Assembly (NCBI RefSeq): GCF_021028975.2
Contig: NC_059430.1
Coordinates: 95,480,001-95,544,000, forward strand
DNA length: 64,000 bases
DNA from: Sphaerodactylus townsendi
Taxonomy: Eukaryota
Reading direction: 5' to 3'
Every line of letters starts with the position of its first letter. Position 1 is the stretch's first letter. Below the pieces are notes generated by a model, which was not told where the DNA came from, did not search any database, and was given only the letters and a program-made list of their open reading frames with translations. This document shows, one piece after another, positions 1,252-54,500 of this stretch. Both the position numbers and the translations under genes were made by a program.

Positions 1252-1348
1252 TCTGAGCCCCTTTCTGGAAAGTACAATAAACTAGCATATCTGGTGACTC
1301 CGCGTTCAATTATGTTGTGTGTTGATGCAGCACTGTTTGTTCTTCCAG

Positions 1349-1408
1349 ATTTTGATAAGCTCAAAGCAGAGGCTGATGCCAAGAAGAGAGAATGGAAAAG
1401 GAAGCATG
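1349..1408 (+). CDS. MYOM3: Myomesin-3 coding exon (helical linker)
   Basis: ccag|AT...CATG|gtaaga; DFDKLKAEADAKKREWKRKH; phase 1/1. Confidence 0.88.
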
Positions 1409-3004
1409 GTAAGATCATCTTCAGGCCAGCGGCTCTGCCCAGCCTGCATTAGCTGTGCTCACGGTCAGAGGGATCATCTGCCCATAAAGGATATTAAGCA
1501 TCTAATGGAAGGATGGGGGAGGGGAAGCACAGGTGTGACAAAGAACAGTGGTTAAAATTGTGGCCAAGGTGGAAGGTGTGTGTGTGCAGGGGCGCTGGGT
1601 GTAAAATAGAAAAGGGGTTTTAAAGCTTGATGTGCTTGATAAAGGGTCCTAAAATTGTTTTAGGAAGACTGTGCAGAATTCTACGCGCACGTTGGTATTG
1701 GTATTATGCCACCTTGTAGGGAAGTGAACCATGAATCTCTTGCAGCTTCAGGGATGGTCTTCTGTTGATAGGATAACAAAGTACAAAGGAAACTACTTCA
1801 ATATGTCAGGCAGACATCAGAAAAGTTGCATCTACTAAAATCCTCTCTTCTGCGCAGACATTAACCTTGTTTCCTTTGTATCCTTTCTGATGCATTCTCG
1901 TGCAGTAGCTGTGTTAGTCTATTGCAGCAAAATAAAACAGAAGCCCACTGGCGCCTTAAAGACTAACACTGCTTCTTCCAGGGTCGACTTTCTACACCTA
2001 TCCACACACCCATAGCGGAACTGTTTCAGTTTTGCCCCACACTCTGGGCTTTTTTCAGGCAACAAAAGAGCTTGCCACTCTTTGATGTGCCTATGATGGA
2101 CCATGCCGTGACTTATCTGACAAGTCAAGTCAAGTAAATTTATTTATATATGGCCATAGGCTTTTAAAAACATAGTCAACAAATATAACACTTTATAATA
2201 TGGATATAAACATTATGAGGCTGATTCTGCACAGGCAACTCTAATGGGTTAAGTGAACCCATATTGCCTGTGCCACCGTTTGCACAGTGGGTGTGGGGGC
2301 CATCCTGGATTGCTGGGATCCCGGTGGCAGGAGGCAGCACGGTTCACACATGTTCCCTGAAAATCGTGCACCTGAGAATCCCCTTCACCTGAGAATCCCC
2401 CTCACCCGAGAAATCCCACTTACTCACTTACTGGCACAACGTGGCGGCCGCCTAGAGAAGCCACTCTAATAGCAGCTGCCTGGGGAATCCACTATAATGG
2501 TGGACGGAAGGAGGGGAATAGAACACTACCTGCTTGCCGTAGTTCACACGGGAAATCAGGAAGTGGCTAAAACTCAGCTTAAAGGAAAACAAGTTGCTAA
2601 TTTAGGCCGATTCCCCACTCACCTTTTGTTGCGTGCTACTCGCTGCAAGTAGCACGGGGTCCAGCCGCACTCCCCACTACAGCAGCGGTGACAACGCAGC
2701 TGCTCCAATTCTGCCGCTCTCCTACCCACTCAGTGCGTGTCATTTCTGTTTTTGTTCGGAACAGCGCCTTTTGGAAAAACCCGCGCGGAGCACGGGGCAG
2801 TGGGGAAGCCCGGGGGTGACTCTGGGTTTCAATTTTCCTGCCGCTTAGTGACGTGGACCCTCCCATCCAATCAGGCCATGGCGGGGTGTGCGCGATGCGC
2901 ACGCAGCAGATTATTAATTTTTTAACACGTAGTTTTGAGCACCAATGGGCATAGACACAGAGCCCTTTGGGGGTGGGCGGTTTATAAATTTGATAGATAG
3001 ATAA

Positions 3005-3076
3005 ATACATACATACATACATACATACATACATACATACATACATACATACATACATACATACATACATACATAC
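3005..3076. repeat. (ATAC)n microsatellite
   Basis: Direct tandem tetranucleotide run. Confidence 0.95.
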
Positions 3077-4274
3077 ACGTGGAGACATTGTTTTGTCCTT
3101 TTGAAAAAAAATTCCCGCCCCAGCACAATGCAGCAGCCAATCTGGACACCCCCTGAGTGGATCGTGGGGAGTCCTGCCTGGCTGCTGCGTGGCTGCCACG
3201 TTCATTGGACCAAGGGGCAGAAGCTGCAGTGGGGAACATGACCCCGCGCTCAAAAGGTCCTGGAACAAACTAAACCGGTGCGTATCGACCACCATCTTAG
3301 AAGTGGGGAAACTACCTCTGTGACTTTCATTTAACTCAGGTTCAGCCAAATATAACAGGTCAGAAGTGTTTGGGGGCAAGTTCTGTGGGAAAGCTTTTTT
3401 CACACCCCTGAATCTGTTATTTTTGTCTTGTGCGGAATCACCCTCAGATAACATTTACAATACCACAAAAAGCTTTAAAACAGTAAATATTAATCAGTCA
3501 AACCAACATATCAATCAATAAAATCAATTTTGGACAGCCACTCTCATAGAAACTACATTAGCCCTTATTTTCTTTGCTGCCGGGGCATACAATGACATTC
3601 TATATAAAATCATCAGAATCTGGTAGTAGGAATATTATTTTCTCAGTATCAGAATGAAAATTTAAACCAGATAACATTCCAGCAAGAATTTTAGCTCTGG
3701 GTTGCAATTAAAGTACACATATAGTGGGGTAAATCCTCCAGGGCTAGCATATTTCAAATATAAACCCCTGGTCCTTTGGTATTTGACTATAGTGCTGTTG
3801 GGATTGTTTTGAAATGCAAGGACATGAAAGCTGATCTGAAGTTATGATTTGACTGGCACTAAAGCCCATTTTAAAGTAAAATAAAATGGACTCAAGAATG
3901 GGGGGAGGGAGGGGGGAGGACCCCGCTCCTCTTCCCTCTTCCCTCCAGAAGAGCAGCCCATATTGTTTGGGGCGAGGAAGGCTCCTGGGTTGGGGGAAGG
4001 TGGCTGGGGACGGAATGGAATGTCGTGAGTCCTGCACACCCATTGGCTGGATGGTTTGTTGTCGGACATTCCATCCCTTAGGCAATTATGTATAAGGATA
4101 TCCTAACTAAGCCATTGCTAGACAGAATAGACAAGACAAACCTTGATAGACCAGGAGTCTGACTCAGTAGAAAAGTTTTATGAGATGTGTGGCTATAATG
4201 TGCCGCCAGGTGGCACTGTTACCAGCAAAGTCATATACAGGTGACCAAGACCCAGTCTTTTTGCCCCTGAACAG

Positions 4275-4342
4275 GTCCGCATTTTATTGAACAACTGCAT
4301 TGGAAGGTCACGCCAGAATGTGAAGTCCTGCTGACTTGCAAG
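4275..4342 (+). CDS. MYOM3: Myomesin-3 coding exon
   Basis: acag|GT...AAG|gtaaag; GPHFIEQLHWKVTPECEVLLTCK, typical myomesin sequence. Confidence 0.9.
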
Positions 4343-4596
4343 GTAAAGAGTTTACTCTCAACACACTGGCTTGTTTATAAAAAATGACAAGAAAATGGAG
4401 ACAAATAATACCAGCAGTTAATAAACCTTAAATATTTTGTAAAGCAAACATGCCTTGCCTTCCAAGTTATGCCAGCTCCCAACTGGGGCTAGGAATAGAT
4501 GCTGCCCTATGTGAAAAATGAGCAGGGCAGTTGCTTTGTTTCCCTGTTGTCTGTCTTCTACTAAATTCCCCCCACCCTATCATTTGCTTTTCAAAG

Positions 4597-4707
4597 GCAG
4601 CGAACATGAAAAAGGACAGCACCTTCAAGTGGTTCATGGACAACAAAGCCCGCACAGATGGCCAGTATGAACCAAAGACAGGTGATGGGATCCTTCGGAT
4701 TAAGAAG
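4597..4707 (+). CDS. MYOM3: Myomesin-3 coding exon
   Basis: aaag|GCA...AAG|gtattg; AANMKKDSTFKWFMDNKARTDGQYEPKTGDGILRIKK; 111 nt, phase 0/0. Confidence 0.88.
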
Positions 4708-4953
4708 GTATTGGCTCTCAAACAGGATGATAATGCATGTCTGAAGCTTTTCTGACCTTGGGTTGGACCAAGGATCTCTCTCTAGCTCAGTGTGGTCTAC
4801 CCTAAGGCTATAACCAAATGTAGATGAAAAAAGAAGTTGAAAAAAGGGAAAGAATGATTCAGATGAAGATTAACAGACTCATCTGTTTTCTTTTGATGCT
4901 CCCTTACTGGCCCTTCTTCTTGTTTATATGTTGATTTAATTGCTCTTTATATG

Positions 4954-5343
4954 TGTTAGGTTCTGCTACTCCGGCCATCAAACGAGACTCATGAAGGTTT
5001 CCAAGAGCTTTATTGGTACCATGTCAGACCGTAGGTCCAGATAGTCAAAACTGGGGTTTGGCTCACTAGCCCCAAGTATATATCTGTAGGTTACAGTTTG
5101 GATCAACCCATAATCCCCCACCCTCACATTCCCATAACATCAGAATGAGAAAGGACAGTGGGAAAGAAGCATTGTTTGGGGCAGACAGCTCACTCCCTCA
5201 GGAAGGCAGATAAGGAGGAGCAGTTAAGCACTACTGAACTAGTTACATGCATGGAGCAAGGAGAGGCCCCATGGCCTTGAGTGATGATAATAGTTGGACC
5301 ATCTGCAGCAGAATGGTAGATGTGCAAACTGCCAGGCCTGACA
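4954..5343 (-). mobile_element. Solo LTR (Gypsy/ERV-like, 390 bp) in a MYOM3 intron
   Basis: TGTTAGG...CCTGACA inverted termini; 5-bp TSD ATATG; AATAAA on the minus strand. Confidence 0.75.
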
Positions 5344-5384
5344 ATATGTGTGTATAATATGTATTTTAAAAGCTTATTTTAATG

Positions 5385-5909
5385 TATTGTCGAAGGCTTT
5401 CACGTCGAATTATGCTTATGCTGTGGTTTCAGACTAGCATTCTCCTGAGCGCTTTCAGATCAGGGTTGGTATCTTCAGAGGATCTGATGTTGGGAAAGCA
5501 AGCGGGAGTACAGGTTCCAGGGTGGGGGAAGTTCTGTTCGTGAGTAACAAAGGCGGCAACCAGGTCAATAGTTGAGGGCATCTGAATAGAAGTATGAGTA
5601 ACAATGAAGACTATAGCATGGGCGTAACACTGGAGATGACCTTGCTATCTCCAGTGTTACGCCCATGCTATAGTCTTCATTGTTACTCATACTTCTATTC
5701 AGATGCCCTCAACTATTGACCCGGTTGCCTTCTTTGTTACTCACAGACAAGGTTTCTCCACCCACCCTGGACACTCCAACATATATATACTCCACTTGCT
5801 TTCCCAACATCAGATCCTCTGAAGATGCCAGCCACAGATGCAGGTGAAACGTCAGGAGAGAATGCTGCTAGAACACGGCCATACAGCCCGGAAACCACAC
5901 AGCGCCCAA
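5385..5909. mobile_element. Penelope-like element remnant, palindromic, with hammerhead-like core
   Basis: 12-bp TSD CTTATTTTAATG; inverted arms centred near 5643; CCT-CTGAAGA-stem-GAAAC-GTC-AGG at 5816-5856. Confidence 0.75.
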
Positions 5910-6149
5910 CTTATTTTAATGGTTTGCATTGTTTGCCACCTTGGGATCCATGGGATGGAAAGGCAGCATTAAAATGTTCCTAATTGATTAAATTATTAAT
6001 TAAGCAGGGGGAGACCAAAGGGAGGTCAATAAGCTTTCTAGACAGAAACTCAGTAACAAATTAGCATAAAGCGATATTATAACTTGCCTCTGGCTAGTTT
6101 TCTTATTCCTGACTGTTGTCATTTTTGTTGGTGAAATGTTGTTGGCTAG

Positions 6150-6237
6150 ATTACCAAAGCAGACAAGGGAATATACAAAGCTGTGGTTTCTGATGATCGC
6201 GGACAAGATACCACCCAACTTGACCTTACAAAGGAAG
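6150..6237 (+). CDS. MYOM3: Myomesin-3 coding exon
   Basis: ctag|ATT...GAAG|gtaact; ITKADKGIYKAVVSDDRGQDTTQLDLTKE. Confidence 0.9.
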
Positions 6238-7348
6238 GTAACTGGACCAATTGACTAGGGTTACAAAGTCCTTGTGGCTGCCAGATGTGTTGCTACCAGA
6301 TGTTCATTTGGAGTTCCCAACTGCAAACTTAATTCCCAGCCATGGAAAGGCCCAGTTCAGATCAAGAGCACAGTATTTGGGAAGAAAGGACATAAGCCTT
6401 CCACCCATGCCATTTTTCTTAGCATGAAAAGGCCATGCAGTGCTGCCGTTGGGGTAATTTGTTTGAAGCCAACAGTACGACTGGGGCTTGTTGCTTGTGT
6501 TGAGCACCAGTTCCCTTGGCTGTATTTGAGTCAGTCACTCTTTCTTGGTATAACCTACCTTGCAGGATTGCAGTGAGAATCACAGCGGGAGGGCAGAACC
6601 ATATTCCCTGAGGAAGGGCAGGATAAAAAGATACATGTTGATTAAGGCAGCAGTGTACCCTTACACAATGGCACCCAGGGCTTACCCCAGACACCACATC
6701 CCCCCCTGCACCCACCCCCTGCCAAATTCCCCCCATGCCCCCTCGACCAAACTCCCCCTGTGCCCTAGCCGATCCCACAAAAAACAACAAACCTTTCCTC
6801 TGTCGCTTCAAGTGGCTCCTGGCTGGCAACCCACTGAGAGTGGAGGAAGTTTGGCGAGGGGTGGCGGAGGAGTAGGGGGAAGTTCAGCTGGGGCTGGGCA
6901 GGAGGGAGAGTGAAAGGGGGAGAGGACCAAAAGGTGCCCCCTATGTGATTCAGGAGAATGGTGCCTGAGTCATCTGCACCCTCTTCCCTCCCAGAGGGTG
7001 CAGATACGCCACTGTCTCCAGGAATTACAGCTCATCTTCAGAATACAGAGATCAGTTCCCATGGAGCAAATGGATACTTTGGAGGGTGGACTCTGGCATT
7101 GTGCCCCACTGAGGTTCCTGTCTGCCCCAGACTCTTCTCCCAAATTTCTAGGAGTTTCCCAGTCTGGATCTGGTATACCTACCCCACCCCCTGGTAACAC
7201 TAAATTATTGATAGATGTTTTTTCAATGAAAAAAATTTTTTTTTCAAGTTTACTAATTGACTATGTGATGTGGCTTTGGTTGTTTGCTGTCACTGTGTGC
7301 GTGATTGCTTATTACTCCTCAAGGATTTTTAAAAATTTTCTTTTGTAG

Positions 7349-7387
7349 CGTTTGATGACATCCTGAAGGAACTTGCCAGGATCAGTG
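7349..7387 (+). CDS. MYOM3: Myomesin-3 39-nt coding exon
   Basis: gtag|CG...GTG|gtaagt; AFDDILKELARIS; phase consistent on both sides. Confidence 0.88.
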
Positions 7388-7434
7388 GTAAGTCATTTTT
7401 ATTTTCTTAGCCTGGTGACAATAATACTGTATAA

Positions 7435-7722
<288 letters not shown>

Positions 7723-7759
7723 TAAGAGTGCATTGAGATGTTAATAAATCCTCTGGTAA

Positions 7760-7996
<237 letters not shown>

Positions 7997-8719
7997 TAGA
8001 GAGGAGTCTGTGACTTCTTATTCAAGTCGATTCTCTTCCCAGAACCAGCACAAAAGAGAACCTTCCTCTCTCTTGTGCTCAAAAAATGGCTGCCATGTCT
8101 CCTCAGTACAGTGTGTGAATAGGAACTGTGGGCATACCCCCCAGGGAGAGAAACAATTGTGGGATATTCCTACATGTTATTTTATTTAAATTGTATGTGC
8201 ATTTTTAATTGCCCTTTTCCTGATACTGGACTGATAAGCCAAGTAACCCAACAGGGTCCACAAAAGGAATGCATAAGGTGGGGCCACATCAAAAGCGGTG
8301 AAATGGGAAACTGAAGTGTTCAGTGACCCATATGTTCTACAAGGAGGAAACTAATTCTGTGGAACGTTAGCCAAAGGAAGTTGAAATCTAGGGCACAGCC
8401 ATTTTGAAATCATTTGTATTTTTGAACACATAGGCCCTTTCCGCATATGCAGAATAATGCACTTTCAATCCACTTTCAATGCACTTTGCAGCTGGATTTT
8501 ATTGTGTGGAATAGCAAAATCCACTTGCAAACAATTGTGAAAGTGGATTGAAAGTGAATTATTCTGCATTTGCAGGCCATAGTTTTACTCTTCAGTCTTC
8601 TGTAGCATTGTTTTATAAAATTTCACTGCAGCAAATATATCCCTGCAAATATGCAAATATGATATCCCTGCGCCACAGCAAATATGGAGCAAATATGCAG
8701 CAAATATGATATCCCTGCG

Positions 8720-9507
8720 CCACATGAAGCGGGTGCTTAGACGACAAGAGCGAGAGTGGAGGAAATCTTGTGACGGAGCTGCGCGAGCATCTTATAGGAC
8801 GTTTATGAAGGCCTATGAGATGGCGACGAAGGAGGCGAAGAGAGCTTTCTTCTCCTCCTCTCTCGCATCTGCTAGGTCTCGCCCGGCACAATTGTTTCGT
8901 ATAATTCGGTCTTTAACCTCCTTATCGGAAGGTTCTATAAATCATCAATTGACTATTAGCTGTGAGGCATTCATGAGCTTTTTTGCAGATAAAGTCACAT
9001 TTCTCCGCCAGGACCTTCCCGCCACGTTGACTACAATTAGCGAACTGGAGCTCCATTGCCATTTTCTGGCCCTTGTTTGGCCCAGTTTTCCCTGCTCTCT
9101 GAAACCGCTGCTGACAGGGCCTTGGCTGCTGTTAGACCTACTACCTGTCCTCTGGATCCGTGCCCCTCCTGGCTTATTAAAACTTCAGGGAGGAGCTACG
9201 ACCCCACTTGTTGAAGATCATCAATGATTCTCTTGAGCAAGGAGTCTTTCCGGGTGGGTTGAAGGAGGCAGTGGTCTGCCCACTCCTAAAAAGACCATCG
9301 TTAGATCTAGGAGATCTGGCCAATTACCGCCCCGTTTCAAATCTTTCATTCCTGGGGAAGGTAAATGAGAGAGTGGTGTTGGAGCAGCTTCAGGGTTTCC
9401 TGGATGACACATCGGCCTTCGATCCCTTCCAGTCCGGCTTCCGTGCTGGGCATGGGACGGAGACTGTTCTCGTCGCTGTCACAGACACGCTCCGTATGCA
9501 GCTTGAT
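8720..9507 (+). mobile_element. L2-clade LINE internal ORF2 fragment
   Basis: [15 protein letters not shown]...[14 protein letters not shown]...[13 protein letters not shown] reverse-transcriptase N-terminal motifs, frameshifted, no 3' tail. Confidence 0.85.
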
Positions 9508-9716
9508 TACTCCGTATGCAGTATTATTGCAGTATTATATATTATTTTATATGAATGAAGATCCTATTATAAGGGGTCCAAAAACAGACTGAGCCGGGTT
9601 TGGACCCCTTATAATAATTGTTGTGTTCATATTTTCAGTTGTTGTGTTCATATATTGACAGTAGAGAAAGTCATGGCTCATTCATTGCAAAATCTGTCTT
9701 CAATTTTGTTTCCTAG

Positions 9717-9753
9717 CTTTCGACGATGCGCTGGCTGAACATCAAAGGCTCAA
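9717..9753 (+). CDS. MYOM3: Myomesin-3 37-nt coding exon
   Basis: ctag|CT...CAA|gtgagt; AFDDALAEHQRLK. Confidence 0.88.
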
Positions 9754-10913
9754 GTGAGTTTTCTGCTCCCACAAGCTTTCCTTTTCAACACAATCAAATT
9801 TCCACGTGGCATTTGACTGGGGGTCTAAGCAGGGCTCATCAGAACTTGGGTGCTAAGAAGGGTCGACCTCAGTTAAGACTCTGATGGGAAACCACCAAGG
9901 AAGGCTAGGGTTATTATGAAGCAAATGGAAGTGGCATCTCCGTTCCTCTTGCCAGGAATGCCCCAAGGATGGGGTCACCCTGAGTCAGTTGCAACTCGAT
10001 GGCACATTCTTCGTCTTCTTTACAGTGTCAGAAAACACTTCTCTTGTGGACTTTACCATCTGTTCTTTCTGAGCATGTTCTACTCGTCTGGGCACCCTCA
10101 GTAAGAACTGTGAATGGTTCTGCTGCCCTAATGTTCTTATTGGCAGAATTTGCATCTTGAGACAAGAAATGGCTATGCTAGAAAAGTGATTTCTGAGATT
10201 ACGTTGGCCGACCTCTTGAGTGTTATATCGGGGCAGCAGACTTTTCATGGGGTGAAGACTGTTTGGAAGGAAGGAGGCGAAGGAAGCACATGTAGTCTGC
10301 AGAGCCAGCATGGGGGAATGATTCATATGTTAGAATAGGATCTGGCATATCTTTGTTCAAATCCTCATTCTGCTATGAAGCTCACTGAGTGACCTTGGGC
10401 CAGTCGCTCTCTCTAGAACACATGAATGCATGAAGCATCTTTATACTAAATCATATCGTGGTGCTTTGGGTCCCCACTGGGGATAAAGGCTGGATGTATA
10501 GACAAAGTGAATAAAGGTCTATTCTGCTTCATCAGACACACAGATTCTGGGAGATCAGCTCAGAATAGCTCAAGACATTGCAGGAATTACCTGCAGGTCC
10601 TTTTGAAAGAGCAGCTTATTTATTGATTATGTTATTTATTTATGATTGATCAATGTATGTTATTTATTTTCTTGCTGGGGCTCAGGGTGGATTACACAGA
10701 ACAAATCAATACAATCAAGGTGGGACATCCAATTGACAGTGCAATAGGACTTGACTTAAGAAAGTAGAACTAGGTTTTTGTATGGGTTAAATAGGGTAAC
10801 CCCATGGAAAAGGAGGACAGGGATTCAGAACTGTAGCTGTGGCAATGGCTTTTAGATTTGCATTTAGATTTGCATTGAAAACCTCGCTAAAGTTGTTGAT
10901 GTTTCATTTTCAG

Positions 10914-10936
10914 GCAAGCAGCGGTTGTGGAAGAAC
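10914..10936 (+). CDS. MYOM3: Myomesin-3 23-nt micro-exon
   Basis: ttttcag|GCAAGCAGCGGTTGTGGAAGAAC|gtgagt; QAAVVEE; needed to bridge the phase-2 end of the previous exon and the phase-1 start of the next. Confidence 0.82.
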
Positions 10937-11605
10937 GTGAGTATATGACTGTGCACATCTTTTGATCCTAGTCTCATTTTTATTGATCATCATATATGAA
11001 ATAGGGATGGGTAAAAAAAAACTTTATGGATGAGGCACCCGCCACTAAGGTGCCAATTTTTGCAAATACCGGAGACCCCTTGGATTTGCAGGATTTTTTT
11101 TCAATTCGGAGGCCCTGAAAGGGGCTAAGGATGATTTTTTGTACCTGGGCAGGCATCACGACAAAAAGATGTATTAAAAATGGTGTCAATATGCTTCCAA
11201 CAAGGGGTGAGGAGATGAGGAAACTGGAAGAAGAGGAAAGAGGAAGGGAAAGTAGTACCTAGTGAGGGAAGGGAATGAAGCAGAACAGGATTGGAAGGAG
11301 GGAGGAACAGAATGGATGCAACAGCATGGGTGAAGGCTGCCAAAGAATAGTTGGGGGGTGGGGGAGCAGAAGCCGGAGCAAGTGCAGGGCAGAAGCAGGT
11401 GCAAGATCAGAAGATCTTAGCGGGGGAGGGAAAGTGGATGCAGTGCAAGATGGCTGGCTGGTGGGCAATGGGATTTCCACTCCCCTTTGTGGGTGTCCCC
11501 CCCTTTCATATGTATATGTGAACTAAGATGAACTACTTATTTGGGAGCCAGAAGGCAGTATAAAGCCAGAAATAACAACACCTGCATTCTCTCTCCTTCC
11601 ATCAG

Positions 11606-50251: not shown

Positions 50252-50665
50252 TTATGCCTGAACTTTAAGCAAAGTCTTCAACTGAAAAGTCATGATATCT
50301 TTATCAGCAGGGTTGAGTGAAACAGTGACCCAGTGACTCGGTGGCTTAGGAAGTACACTTGGAGAAGGAGGCTCACTGAATTTTGCTCCAGCATAATTTT
50401 GGTTGGCTTGAGGCATGAAGAGTGCTGTGGATAATGCTGGATTCCAATTCTGACTAGTTGGAAAATGCATTGTGTTCTTTCCCCCAGTCTGCATGGCTTG
50501 CCACGCTGCAGATGGTGGATTACATCCATGTACCCTTTCTTTTTTGTGGATTTTCTTCATCTGTGAATTCTGATCTTTGTTCTTTTTCCTGTTTAGCTGC
50601 TGGTGGGTCTTATTAGAATTTCGGGGCTGGGTAGATGGACTGTTAAACCTTTCTCCACCCCCCAT
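50252..50665 (-). CDS. PNRC2: Proline-rich nuclear receptor coactivator 2 (single coding exon, 137 aa)
   Basis: MGGGERFNSPST...YAGAKFSEPPSPSVLPKPPSHWV...MTFQLKTLLKVQA*; PNRC motif; acceptor AG 18 nt upstream of the ATG (exon starts 50683); the ORF-track GTG extension is 5' UTR. Confidence 0.96.
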   Translation of the reverse strand: MGGGERFNSPSTQPRNSNKTHQQLNRKKNKDQNSQMKKIHKKERVHGCNPPSAAWQAMQTGGKNTMHFPTSQNWNPALSTALFMPQANQNYAGAKFSEPPSPSVLPKPPSHWVTVSLNPADKDIMTFQLKTLLKVQA

Positions 50666-50679
50666 TTTCAACTTAAGTG

Positions 50680-51670
50680 TCACCTATTGAGGAAAGAAAA
50701 ATAGAGGAAAGAGAACAAGCACAAATGTCAACAGAAATCTGAAGTATTTTCTTGAAAATACATGCACAGAACACAAAATACATTTTTTTCTGCAAAGGGA
50801 ATGCCAAACTTTAGTATTGCTAAAGGCTAAGTTAAATGTTACAAGGGTTTCCCAGACAATTTAAAAAGTGGAGGGAGGGGGTGCTCAGTGCCACGATGAA
50901 GGAAGGACTTGACAGGAATTATCCCTAAATTGCTATTCTGTCCAGGAGGGATGAAAGACAAATATCTCAAACTTTCACAAACTAATCTGGCTACCAAAGA
51001 AAAGCCACTAGAACTTTGTTCTCAAATACAACCAAAGTTCACAAGCCAGTCCACTTATTACACCCGAAAACATTGTCATTTGAAAAGTTACTTAAGTTCA
51101 TAACGGTAACAAACGGTAAGTTCATAAAGTTCATAACGGTAACAAAACATAGATTTATAAAACAGATTGGCACACATATGAGATTTGGGTATTTACACAT
51201 TAAAACCTTAACGTGTGATACAGAATGTTCTTGCCAAATATTCTACAAGCAACACCCCAACGGAATAATAGGCAGATATAACATCTAAATGTTGAGTAAT
51301 TAAACATCGTTACTACAATACTACCTCAATTTTCATTGCTTCCTACAAAATATAAGGCTATAATGCGTTTTTACATGTGAGCTCCAACTCTTCACCAAGG
51401 ATGCAGGAAGCCATGACAAATGGTCTTTCTTAACAGACCAGTTCTGAGCAGAGAAGATTTCAAAATACCCTTCAGGTTGCATTACAGTTATTGCCCTGTT
51501 TACCTTTCAGTTTTCTTCTCAAAGTCCACAGTCTCCACCTCCTGCCCTCTTTCTTGCTGCCACACCTGAAAGAATAGATGCTGATTCCTGTTGGATCCCT
51601 TCCTTTGCCTGGAAATGGTAGTTCTCATGGGCCGATCTGCTGTTTTCAGCCACGAAGCCGAGCCCAACAT
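50680..51670 (-). CDS. Spliced 56-aa upstream ORF/microprotein in the PNRC2 leader, join(51670..51504,50683..50680)
   Basis: MLGSASWLKTADRPMRTTISRQRKGSNRNQHLFFQVWQQERGQEVETVDFEKKTER*; last codon AG|G is split by the intron and followed by TGA 14 nt before the PNRC2 ATG. Confidence 0.65.
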
Positions 51671-51712
51671 CGGATTCTTGGCACGCGGGCTTCAAGGGTA
51701 GAAGTCCCAGCT
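51504..51712 (-). other. PNRC2: PNRC2 5' leader exon 2
   Basis: Minus strand tgtctttttag|AGCTGG...GAAAG|gtaaac; 209 nt; internal alternative acceptor ttctttcag| at 51565. Confidence 0.75.
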
Positions 51713-53949
51713 CTAAAAAGACAAAGTATGAATAAGTATCAAATAAAGTTCCTTGCCAGAAAGTAGTAGTTTTGGGGATGATACGTAAATAACAGCCCAA
51801 CTGACCAATCCTAGGCCCAGCCACATAGTTACCAACCAGATTCTACTTGGAAGGCTTTAAAGGACCTCAAGGTTGATGAGTTCTAACTACTAGCCTCTAA
51901 ACATAAAGATGTGCTTTGTCCATCTTTACTTTAAAAAAAAGTGGATACCTTAATTTTGTATTCTAATATGAGTACACTACTGGCTACATTAACATTTAAA
52001 AGTCAGTTTGCAGTAAACTATTATTTCTTGTCTCTTCTACTGTGTATTTTCAATTCCAGGGCAGCAATAATGGTCTACTAGAATCTACAGTACTTAAAGA
52101 CAAAAAGCGAGTTGTAGTATAAGCTTCTGTGAGTTGGAACATATTAAAGTATTTTGTGTATTAGTTTAAAAAGAAAAAACCCAGCAAAACAGAATGATCA
52201 ATTACAGGGCTGCCTATAGGAAACAACTCATTTAAAATACTTCTGTACATCAAACTTTTCATTGTTTGTAGTTTACATTTTAAACATATTGCTCAGATTT
52301 TACAAAATTAAAACAGTTTATTTTAGTGAAATCCAGTAGTGAGCAAGCCCACATAGATTTTTTACATATTCATATCAAGTTACTAGTCTGAACTATTGAC
52401 TCAATTGTAGAAAATTTAAATCACTCATTTAATTCTCAAAAAACTAACAAGTATTCGAAACCCCTCCCCCAGTACTTCAGATACTGTAAGAAAGCTCTTC
52501 CACATTGGTTTTTTGTTGTTGTTCAGTCAGGTCTGACTTATGAGGGTCCCTGGTGGGGTTCCAAGGCAAGAGATGCTCAGATATGGTTTGCCACTGCCTG
52601 TCTTCCACTGCCTATCAGGTCTTAGAGGTCTCCCATCCAAATTCTCATCAGGATCAATCCTACAAAGCATCTGAGATCTGACAAGATCAGGCTAGACTAG
52701 ATTATTCAGGTCAGAGTGCGTTTCTTTTACTGAACACAAATAGTTATTTGACGCTTACAATAAACACCCCCCCCCCCCCATGCACAAGGTTCTCACTGCA
52801 TGTAGCATCTAAGTCTCACTTTGAACGAAGTACATGGCAGTAACCCACTTCCAAAAGAGCAGGTCTCTTTGCCCCAGCAAGTCCAATCCTGTCCAGTGAG
52901 GCACATCTTGGCCATTGATTTCAATGCTAGTCTGCTCTGCATAGGACCACTTTTCTTTCCAGACCACAATAACAAATAAAAGAAATTATCTCCCCCACGT
53001 ACAATATCTCCTTGATACAAGGCTCGTACCATGGTCTCTCCTGAGCATAATGGTTCCACCTCCTTTTCTCCACAAGACACAAGACAAACACCCCATTTTA
53101 CACATATTTTTCACAATTTGCTGCAAAGGATGAGGTCACATTCACACTAACCGCTAGGGGCAAAACAGCTTTGATTACATACACCAAACAACTCTCTTTC
53201 TCTGGACATTCGTTTTCTTCCCCAGCTCCCGCAGGGAAACATCACTCCTGGATTCAAATACGGTTGCAAACTACGACTCGAGCAATTCTTGCAGATATGG
53301 GGGGGGGGCGTTTTGGGCGGGTGTTCAACGGGGGTGTAAATGCACAGAACCTCCCTTCCAAAACTGCCTTTTCCTCCAGGGGGCGCATCTTTGTAGTAGA
53401 TCTTGACCTGCTGTGATCACAGAACACCAGACCCCACATGGAGGCTGGCAAGCCTAACAGGATACTTGACCCGCTGCTTACATCCCCGATCCTTTAATGT
53501 CGTTGACACACAAAACCTCAACCCTCAAAGCACGTCACAAACATACCTACCCCCAGGAAAAATGCAGTCATCCTTACCCAATTTTTTTTTTAAAAAATCT
53601 CGATTACCAAACAGTTCCACAGCCGTGGCAATCTTGCCTCAATTTTATTGGGGAGGGGAGGGGAGATTCCTTCGGGCAAGCAGTCTATCTTACAGCTTTT
53701 ATTTTGTCGCCAAGGGCGGCCGGAAGTCCTTCTGACACCCGCCCCTTCCCTTCAGCGTCCCCCCAAACAAATACCTTCCAATTCCACACCCCTTATCAGA
53801 CGACCCTTCGTTTATTAGTTGTTATGCAGGCCAGCCCCTTTCAAGCACGTAGCAGAAGCAACACCCCCCCGCCCTTTCTTGCTAGACTTTTTCACTGTCT
53901 TCCGCTGTCTTGGGGGGGGGGGGGTATACATGATCGGGTAACCTCTCCC

Positions 53950-54500
53950 ATTCCTTTCTCCTCTGAACAACAACCGCCTGCCCCCTCCCCCCGCCAAGCG
54001 CTAAAGAGAGCCTACCTCTTGCTTTTAAAAAGAAAACGCAACATGGCGGCGCACTATCGGCTCCCATCCCACCTCCCTCAGAACTTTCTCCCACCCCAAG
54101 TTCTTACAGACAGACCTTGATCCGTCCGCCTCCCCACACGTCTAGTCACAGCCTCAACCGCTCCTCGCCTTCCTCAGAGACAGCGGCGAACACAAAATGG
54201 CGGACGCCTTCCTGAGCTGAAGAGCAGAAGGAGGGGGAGTCTCTTCTTTTCTCGAGCAATCTGACCAATAACAGTGCGGCGCATACAAAAAGTTAGCCAA
54301 TAGTAACAGCGTCCGCCTGTTGCTAGGGTTGTGAGGGCGGGTTCTGTAGGAGGAGAAAAGGAAATAGGGAAGCTGCTGTCGGTTGTTGTTTCATTTTGAA
54401 CGCTCTGTACGGGGGAATGTCGGGAAAATGTGGGGGGAAGGTTCCGGATGGTGTAATGCGAAACCAATGGAATAAAGCGGGGCAGGAAAGCGGAGAGAGA
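53950..54500 (-). promoter_or_regulatory. PNRC2 CpG-island promoter and noncoding exon 1
   Basis: CpG-rich; YY1-like AAAATGGCGG near 54195 and ACATGGCGGC near 54041; CCAAT at 54265 and 54297; candidate minus-strand donors after 54016 (AAGAG|gtaggc) or near 54116 (CAAG|gtctgt). Confidence 0.7.

What the first reader, a model, noticed from the sequence alone, without database searches (positions are those of the whole stretch)
50680..51670. Hidden 56-aa microprotein ORF makes the PNRC2 mRNA potentially bicistronic
Seen: an ATG at 51670 opens MLGSASWLKTADRPMRTTISRQRKGSNRNQHLFFQVWQQERGQEVETVDFEKKTER. It runs to the end of leader exon 2, completes its last codon across the splice junction (AG|G) and stops at TGA 14 nt before the PNRC2 ATG. 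It is absent from the ORF track. Established: PNRC2 links UPF1 to DCP1A decapping, and uORFs both repress translation and can sensitise mRNAs to NMD. I recall a similar-sized uORF peptide reported for human PNRC2 but cannot verify it here. Inference: a conserved, functionally uncharacterised microprotein and/or a feedback device that tunes an mRNA-decay factor.
Basis: partly seen in the sequence, partly recalled or inferred. Interest (0 to 1): 0.8.

Follow-up and report, generated by a model that had tools for sequence, protein, structure and literature searches.

The report
Known conserved PNRC2 upstream ORF, lizard copy
The 56-codon upstream reading frame in the leader of this squamate PNRC2 mRNA is real, spliced as described and conserved across amniotes, but it is the counterpart of a conserved PNRC2 upstream ORF already published for human and mouse, so it is a confirmation, not a discovery.

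Summary
An ATG at 51670 (minus strand) opens a 56-codon frame. It fills leader exon 2, finishes its last codon across the exon 2/exon 3 junction, and stops at TGA 14 nt before the PNRC2 ATG.

cDNA-like contigs from the same organism join 51504 to 50683 and 54116 to 51712. This confirms both introns and makes this AUG the first one in a leader of about 309 nt.

The ORF alone is not beyond chance: 8% of shuffles give one as long. Its conservation is. Ungapped 56-residue orthologues exist in Anolis, Varanus, birds, platypus, dog and pig. Spliced bird and other sauropsid mRNAs show the same junction stop, 14-nt spacer, weak uAUG context and strong main AUG.

dN/dS is 0.32, with omega = 1 rejected (2ΔlnL about 23). 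Control frames give about 1.

This is already known. Takahashi 2020 lists and tested a human PNRC2 conserved-peptide uORF. Paolini 2018 shows translated Pnrc2 uORFs in mouse and higher ribosome density on Pnrc2 under eIF2 phosphorylation.

The most likely role is a leaky-scanning translational gate on PNRC2. A trans-acting microprotein remains open. EJC-dependent NMD is not predicted, because the stop lies on the last junction.

The parts
54116..54197 (-). PNRC2 leader exon 1 (82 nt seen; 5' end approximate). It holds no ATG.
   Evidence: an X4 contig joins 51712|54116 with 82 nt on the exon 1 side, and there is a loose end at 54197. One search gives the sequence. One search shows similarity of the exon end to the 5' ends of spliced sauropsid mRNAs L005, L010 and L006.
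51713..54115 (-). Intron 1 (2403 nt, GT..AG).
   Evidence: joint table: skips 2403, ends CT..AC on the + strand, depth 1431 in X4, absent from the DNA-like runs X1-X3.
51504..51712 (-). Leader exon 2 (209 nt): 42 nt of non-coding sequence, then the uORF.
   Evidence: Both joints; conservation between the squamate and birds starts at the acceptor and stops at the donor. The only indels are single bases upstream of the ATG.
51504..51670 (-). uORF codons 1-55 plus the first two bases of codon 56. The AUG at 51670-51668 is the first AUG of the mRNA, in a weak context (C at -3, T at +4).
   Evidence: 56-aa orthologues. dN/dS 0.32.
51626..51628 (-). Second in-frame AUG (codon 15), invariant in all orthologues and also in a weak context.
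50684..51503 (-). Intron 2 (820 nt, GT..AG). If it is retained, TAA at 51502-51500 ends the same 56-aa product.
   Evidence: joint 50683|51504 (depth 1850). One low-depth X4 contig (record 26, depth 10.9) runs through the intron. One search gives the sequence.
50680..50683 (-). Last base of codon 56 (50683) and the uORF stop TGA (50682-50680), created by splicing.
   Evidence: The same AG|GTGA junction is seen in spliced mRNAs L005, L010 and L006-L009 and at the bird acceptors.
50666..50679 (-). 14-nt spacer between the uORF stop and the PNRC2 AUG. Its length is identical in every sauropsid locus read.
50252..50665 (-). PNRC2 main ORF (137 aa plus stop). Its AUG is in a strong context (A at -3, G at +4).
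   Evidence: (PF15365, E 2.7e-06).

Best explanation
This is the squamate orthologue of the conserved-peptide upstream ORF (CPuORF) of PNRC2.

Shown here:
- It lies in the spliced leader of the mRNA and starts at the first AUG.
- It is 56 codons long in every amniote sampled.
- It ends at a stop codon assembled across the last exon junction, 14 nt before the PNRC2 AUG.
- Its amino-acid sequence is under purifying selection.

Inferred mechanism: it is a cis-acting translational gate.
- The uAUG, and a second in-frame AUG at codon 15, have conserved weak contexts. Part of the scanning 40S subunits would therefore start there.
- After translating 56 codons and terminating 14 nt from the main AUG, those ribosomes would rarely reinitiate.
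- PNRC2 would be made mostly by subunits that leak past both uAUGs and reach the strong main AUG.
- Conditions that change start-codon stringency or ternary-complex supply, such as eIF2-alpha phosphorylation, would shift this ratio. In mouse erythroblasts the uORFs are occupied, the CDS is poorly translated, and ribosome density on Pnrc2 rises 1.9-fold with tunicamycin.

Frame-specific selection means the peptide itself also matters, either as a nascent chain or after release. Which of the two is not settled.
For: Anatomy and splicing: (cDNA-like contigs of the same organism join 50683|51504 and 51712|54116).

First AUG, contexts and spacer. The layout is identical in spliced mRNAs L005, L010, L006 and L007 and at the bird acceptors.

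Orthologues: (Anolis H9GA24 and Varanus A0A8D2JJA9, 56 aa, 82% identity). (peafowl, golden pheasant, turkey, goose, parrot, platypus, dog and pig, all 56 aa); ungapped alignment, with M1, M15 and the terminal T-E-R invariant.

Coding signature:
- variable sites by codon position are 17/15/31.
- pairwise omega is 0.11-0.46 in frame, against about 0.6-4.4 in the two control frames.
- Fisher p = 0.0008-0.02 for the deep pairs.
- ML omega is 0.316. lnL is -637.7, against -649.2 with omega fixed at 1 (2ΔlnL about 23, 1 df).
- no indel inside the ORF, while single-base indels occur just upstream of the ATG.

Literature: PMC7530721 lists PNRC2 among the human CPuORFs tested. PMC5892948 reports two translated Pnrc2 uORF start sites, a poorly translated CDS, and a shift between start sites with a 1.9-fold rise in ribosome density under tunicamycin.
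Against: - There are no ribosome-profiling or proteomic data for this species. One search found no run recorded as RNA, and translation is extrapolated from mouse.
- In the human reporter test, PNRC2 was not among the eight CPuORFs whose frameshift raised reporter expression. A peptide-sequence-dependent cis effect was therefore not seen in HEK293T. That assay did not test loss of the uAUG.
- Orthology to the human CPuORF was not checked directly, because human sequence was deliberately not compared. It rests on dog, pig and platypus entries.
- Synonymous sites and the 42 nt before the ATG are also unusually conserved. Some nucleotide-level constraint that I cannot explain therefore overlies the coding signal.
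Confidence: 0.72

Rival explanations
1. The product is a stand-alone, trans-acting 56-residue microprotein, basic in the N-terminal half and acidic in the C-terminal half. Repression of PNRC2 translation would then be a by-product or a second role, as proposed for the MIEF1 and MKKS uORF products.
For: - Frame-specific purifying selection over the whole length, and exact length conservation across amniotes.
- Between the squamate and birds, dN of the uORF (0.18-0.22) is close to dN of PNRC2 itself (0.13-0.14).
- The human reporter assay saw no sequence-dependent cis effect for PNRC2. The authors themselves say this can mean a function other than control of main-ORF translation.
Against: - No Pfam family and no informative Atlas neighbour.
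- The AlphaFold2 model is of low confidence: pLDDT 58, pTM 0.21, and only one helix at residues 28-51.
- No hydrophobic segment or signal-like N-terminus.
- The library search for PNRC2 plus 'microprotein' found nothing on it.
- Omega of 0.32 is weaker constraint than on PNRC2 (0.12).
Confidence: 0.25
2. NMD feedback device: termination at the uORF stop marks the PNRC2 mRNA for nonsense-mediated decay, so that an mRNA-decay factor limits its own mRNA.
For: General knowledge that uORFs can trigger NMD. Zebrafish MZpnrc2 mutants over-express uORF-containing transcripts (bioRxiv 10.1101/2025.05.08.652725), but that paper says nothing about pnrc2's own leader.
Against: - The uORF stop is assembled on the last exon-exon junction, and the whole CDS and the start of the 3' UTR lie in the same exon.
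- A ribosome translating the uORF removes the only nearby exon-junction complex, and none lies downstream. The 50-55 nt rule is therefore not met, and only EJC-independent NMD could apply.
- None of the papers I opened describes the PNRC2 mRNA as an NMD target.
Confidence: 0.1
3. There is no peptide-level function. The exon is conserved as RNA (splicing enhancers, a protein or miRNA site, structure), and the open frame persists as a side effect.
For: - The ORF alone is not beyond chance (8% of shuffles).
- Synonymous divergence is about 3-fold lower than in the main ORF.
- The 42 non-coding nt before the ATG are about as conserved as the ORF.
Against: - Third-position excess and omega of 0.32, with omega = 1 rejected; control frames give about 1.
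- No indel in 168 nt, while indels occur just upstream.
- The fold of exon 2 is no more stable than shuffles (z = +0.86), and only 1 of 51 consensus pairs covaries.
Confidence: 0.05

Closest known systems
Human PNRC2 conserved-peptide uORF (CPuORF), found by the ESUCA pipeline (Takahashi et al. 2020, Sci Rep, PMC7530721)
   Same: An upstream ORF in the PNRC2 leader whose peptide is conserved across orders. It was chosen by those authors for its well-conserved C-terminal region. Here the C-terminal T-E-R and the whole 56-residue length are conserved from squamates to dog and pig.
   Different: Human sequence was not compared here, by rule, so identity with that CPuORF is inferred from non-human mammals. 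That paper held no supplementary text in the library, so its stated taxonomic range for PNRC2 could not be read. Its reporter test found no sequence-dependent repression for PNRC2.
Mouse Pnrc2 leader uORFs seen by ribosome profiling (Paolini et al. 2018, PLoS One, PMC5892948)
   Same: Long uORFs directly upstream of a poorly translated Pnrc2 CDS, with two nearby initiation sites. The squamate ORF has two invariant in-frame AUGs 42 nt apart, which may be those two sites (inference).
   Different: The mouse data show translation and a response to tunicamycin. Nothing of that kind exists for this species. I could not see the figure, so the match of start sites is unverified.
Inhibitory single uORFs bypassed under eIF2-alpha phosphorylation, as in DDIT3/CHOP and PPP1R15A/GADD34 (from my own knowledge of the field, not checked in a paper here)
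   Same: A uORF with a weak start context close to the main AUG, with main-ORF translation depending on leaky scanning and favoured under stress.
   Different: The mechanism has not been tested for PNRC2. In CHOP a C-terminal peptide motif stalls elongation, whereas the human PNRC2 CPuORF showed no sequence dependence in the one assay reported.
uORF-encoded proteins with dual roles, MIEF1 and MKKS uORF products (as discussed in PMC7530721)
   Same: A conserved uORF whose product may both gate the main ORF and act as a small protein.
   Different: Those products have demonstrated localisation and detection. The PNRC2 uORF peptide has none that I could find.

Membership tests
PNRC2 CPuORF (conserved-peptide uORF) | Lies in the 5' leader of a PNRC2 orthologue's mature mRNA | tested here: met
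   The main ORF matches PF15365. cDNA-like contigs of the same organism join exon 1, exon 2 and exon 3.
PNRC2 CPuORF (conserved-peptide uORF) | An AUG-initiated ORF that ends upstream of the main AUG | tested here: met
   56 codons, TGA 14 nt before the main ATG. The same is seen in spliced mRNAs of other sauropsids.
PNRC2 CPuORF (conserved-peptide uORF) | Peptide sequence conserved across several orders with Ka/Ks below 1 | tested here: met
   ungapped alignment of 11 amniotes, 57-82% identity to the window; omega 0.316, omega = 1 rejected (2ΔlnL about 23).
PNRC2 CPuORF (conserved-peptide uORF) | Homologous to the published human CPuORF | not tested
   Human sequence was deliberately not fetched or compared. 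Dog (A0A8C0LX54) and pig (A0A4X1VSX5) 56-aa entries align without gaps, so this is inferred.
Translated uORF | Ribosome initiation and in-frame footprints on the uORF | not testable with these tools
   No Ribo-seq exists for this organism, and one search found no run recorded as RNA. Mouse Ribo-seq supports it in a mammal.
Sequence-dependent (nascent-peptide) regulatory uORF | A frameshift of the uORF relieves repression of the main ORF | not testable with these tools
   In the literature, PNRC2 is not among the eight CPuORFs that showed this effect in HEK293T.
eIF2-phosphorylation-resistant uORF mRNAs (ATF4/CHOP/GADD34 class) | Main-ORF ribosome density maintained or increased under eIF2-alpha phosphorylation | not testable with these tools
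   Reported for mouse Pnrc2 (log2FC 1.04, FDR 2e-08). Here only the conserved weak uAUG and strong main-AUG contexts are shown.
EJC-dependent NMD target through a uORF | The uORF stop lies more than 50-55 nt upstream of an exon-exon junction | tested here: not met
   The stop is formed on the junction at 51504|50683. No X4 joint was seen in the part of exon 3 that was laid (50560-50683), and the whole main ORF is contiguous in the genome.

The most novel reading that the evidence does not exclude
The 56-residue product is an amniote-wide, trans-acting microprotein. It is co-expressed from the PNRC2 mRNA, and its non-synonymous rate is as low as that of PNRC2 itself. It would be functionally coupled to PNRC2 (mRNA decapping/decay or nuclear-receptor co-activation), which would make PNRC2 a true two-protein locus. 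Unexplained synonymous-site constraint on the exon hints at an extra RNA-level signal.
Probability: 0.2. Interest if true: 0.6.

Novelty: already known. Interest (0 to 1): 0.22.

Why it matters
PNRC2 links UPF1 to the decapping complex, so control of its dosage bears on mRNA decay in general. For this window the result is mainly a clean annotation: a three-exon gene model and a conserved uORF with a measured coding signature.

Beyond the published listing of the human CPuORF, this work adds three things:
- The whole layout is fixed across amniotes. That covers the first AUG, the weak context, the second in-frame AUG, the 56 codons, the stop on the last junction and the 14-nt spacer.
- The peptide is under significant purifying selection (omega 0.32).
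- The geometry argues against EJC-dependent NMD.

The function of the peptide remains an open, testable question, but not a new one.

Tried and rejected
- RNA evidence: the look-up of sequencing runs found no run recorded as RNA. One run of unrecorded kind (X4) proved to be cDNA-like when laid.
- Exact look-ups of the window, Anolis and Varanus peptides found no contigs. Squamate-to-squamate dN/dS could therefore not be done, and the nucleotide tests use the window plus seven bird or other sauropsid loci.
- The long 'proteins' P0004 and P0012 (189 and 208 aa) seemed to read the uORF through into exon 3. They are gene-calling artefacts of a code that reads TGA as W on spliced mRNAs; under the standard code the ORF is 56 aa. 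Rejected as read-through isoforms.
- An ATG in a strong context at about 54045 first looked like an exon 1 uORF start. The X4 joint places it in intron 1. Rejected.
- RNA structure as the cause of the synonymous constraint found no support.
- Pfam, the ESM Atlas and AlphaFold2 gave nothing informative on the peptide.
- No amphibian or fish relative appeared. This is not evidence of absence.
- One literature search was badly framed and returned only general microprotein reviews.

Full report
**1. What is in the sequence**

All features below are on the minus strand.
- The ATG at 51670-51668 opens a 56-codon frame (window:51503-51670:-).
- In genomic DNA it ends at TAA 51502-51500, which overlaps the GT of a donor site (…GAAAG|GTAAAC).
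- The downstream acceptor (…CAATAG|GTGACAC) lies at 50684|50683.
- Splicing AG|G keeps the last codon as AGG and brings in TGA at 50682-50680. Fourteen bases follow, then the PNRC2 ATG at 50665.
- The main ORF is 137 aa and carries the PNRC motif PF15365.
- The ORF listing reports the uORF at a 30-aa threshold. It is 'hidden' only from tracks with a higher length cut-off.

**2. Is the splice real?**

No run of this organism is recorded as RNA. One run of unrecorded kind, X4, behaves as cDNA when laid on window:50560-54300.
- Its summed contig depth is about 1300-3500 over 51435-51684 and 2217 over 50560-50684. Depth is 3-12 in the introns.
- Its contigs contain two joints that the DNA-like runs X1-X3 lack:
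  - 50683|51504 skips 820 nt.
  - 51712|54116 skips 2403 nt.
  - Both have GT..AG ends on the minus strand.
- The second contig extends 82 nt into exon 1 and ends near 54197.

The resulting gene model is:

| Feature | Coordinates |
|---|---|
| Exon 1 | ~54197-54116 |
| Exon 2 | 51712-51504 |
| Exon 3 | from 50683 |
| Leader length | about 309 nt |

Exon 1 has no ATG, so the uORF AUG is the first AUG of the mRNA, at about position 125. A low-depth X4 contig also runs through intron 2. If the intron is retained, the intronic TAA yields the same peptide.

**3. Is it more than chance?**

The ORF alone is not. 401 of 5000 dinucleotide-preserving shuffles of exon 2 contain an ATG-ORF of at least 56 codons. 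The case rests on conservation.

**4. Conservation**

- The word search found 56-aa UniProt entries from Anolis carolinensis and Varanus komodoensis, both 82% identical.
- A profile search of 1.84 billion representatives found 14 relatives.
- Cluster look-up and a second profile search named 56-aa entries from peafowl, golden pheasant, turkey, goose, a parrot, platypus, dog and pig.
- Eleven of these align over 56 columns without a gap. M1, M15, the central Q-H-L…Q…R block and the terminal T-E-R are invariant.
- Public transcript contigs give the same architecture in other sauropsids.
  - L005, L010 and L006-L009 are spliced mRNAs. In them the ORF ends …AG|GTGA and the main ATG follows 14 nt later.
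  - Bird genomic or pre-mRNA contigs have the matching donor (AG|GTAA) and acceptor (AG|GTGACATT…ATGGG).
- Two long 'proteins' that appeared to read through the stop (P0004, P0012) are artefacts of gene calling with TGA read as W.

**5. Coding signature**

The test set is eight sauropsid nucleotide sequences: the window plus seven loci.
- Variable sites by codon position are 17/15/31.
- Pairwise Nei-Gojobori omega is 0.11-0.46 in the uORF frame, against about 0.6-4.4 in the two shifted control frames.
- Fisher tests on synonymous and non-synonymous counts give p = 0.0008-0.02 for the deep pairs.
- A GY+F3X4 codon model gives omega 0.316 and lnL -637.74. The best lnL with omega fixed at 1 is -649.2. 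So 2ΔlnL is about 23 with 1 df.
- PNRC2 itself has omega 0.12 on nearly the same taxa.
- In the genomic alignment of squamate and birds, similarity begins at the exon 2 acceptor and ends at the donor. The flanking introns are unalignable.
- There is no indel inside the 168 nt, while single-base indels occur in the 42 nt before the ATG. The window also has an in-frame TGA eight codons upstream.
- The reading-frame constraint therefore starts at the ATG.

**6. An unexplained extra constraint**

- Between the squamate and birds, dS of the uORF is 0.53-0.64, while dS of the main ORF is 1.5-1.8. dN is similar in both: 0.18-0.22 against 0.13-0.14.
- The non-coding 42 nt upstream are also well conserved.
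- RNA structure does not explain this. The exon folds no better than shuffles (z = +0.86), and only one of 51 consensus pairs covaries.

**7. The peptide**

- It is 6.7 kDa with pI 10.4 and is very hydrophilic.
- The N-terminal half is basic and the C-terminal half acidic. It has no hydrophobic segment.
- It matches no Pfam family and has no informative Atlas neighbour.
- The AlphaFold2 model is of low confidence (pLDDT 58, pTM 0.21) and shows a single helix at residues 28-51.

**8. What is already known**

- Takahashi et al. 2020 (PMC7530721) list a human PNRC2 CPuORF among 17 tested in HEK293T. PNRC2 is not among the eight whose frameshift raised reporter output. The authors note that poor start context, condition dependence, or a function other than main-ORF control could explain such negatives.
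- Paolini et al. 2018 (PMC5892948) describe two closely spaced translated uORF start sites on mouse Pnrc2 and a poorly translated CDS. Under tunicamycin, occupancy shifts toward the first start site and ribosome density rises 1.9-fold.
- None of the papers I opened characterises the peptide or describes the PNRC2 mRNA as an NMD target.

**9. Mechanism**

Shown:
- The uORF starts at the first AUG.
- Both uAUGs have a conserved weak context (pyrimidine at -3; T or A at +4).
- The main AUG has a strong context (A at -3, G at +4).
- The uORF is 56 codons long and the spacer is 14 nt.

Inferred:
- Ribosomes that start at the uAUGs translate a long uORF and terminate too close to the main AUG to reinitiate efficiently.
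- PNRC2 output therefore depends on leaky scanning and responds to factors that alter start-site stringency. This fits the mouse data.
- The frame-specific selection implies that the peptide also matters, as a nascent chain or as a free microprotein. This is unresolved.
The stop is built on the last junction, and the translating ribosome would clear that junction's complex.

**10. Verdict**

It is the orthologue of a published feature of PNRC2 and is already present in UniProt for other squamates, so novelty is low.

Notes on rules:
- Contigs behind unnamed mammal-type ORFs were not fetched or compared because they might be human.
- The joined spliced model was not sent to any search.

Noticed in passing
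window 52560-52800 (intron 1 of PNRC2): In the DNA-like runs X1-X3, summed contig depth jumps from about 20-80 to 1650-11000 here. Many short contigs branch off at 52584-52600 and 52666-52696. This marks a high-copy interspersed repeat inside the intron.
   Followed up: no
P0004, P0012; loci L006-L009: The public protein collection holds 189-208 aa 'proteins' that fuse the uORF to an out-of-frame reading of the PNRC2 exon. They arise from gene calling with TGA read as W on spliced vertebrate mRNA contigs, and the look-up of encoding contigs flags them as 'translates_to_query: no'.
   Followed up: yes
window 51504-51712 compared with 50252-50665: Between the squamate and birds, synonymous divergence of the uORF exon (dS about 0.5-0.6) is roughly a third of that of the PNRC2 CDS (dS about 1.5-1.8). 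The 42 non-coding nt before the uAUG are also conserved, and RNA structure does not explain it.
   Followed up: partly
window ~54197 and 54187-54199: The X4 transcript contig ends at about 54197 with a loose run of A on the + strand. The apparent 5' end lies in a CCGCCATTTTG stretch that resembles a YY1-type promoter motif (my recollection, untested).
   Followed up: no
window 54043-54045 (minus strand): An ATG in a strong GCCGCCATG context is followed by a good GTAGG donor-like site about 35 nt downstream. According to the X4 joint it lies in intron 1, so it is not in the main mRNA. An alternative first exon cannot be excluded.
   Followed up: partly
L006:1-50 compared with L001:3930-3965: One bird mRNA contig uses an acceptor 19 nt upstream of the usual exon 2 acceptor. 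This adds a 3-codon ATG mini-ORF ahead of the conserved uORF.
   Followed up: no
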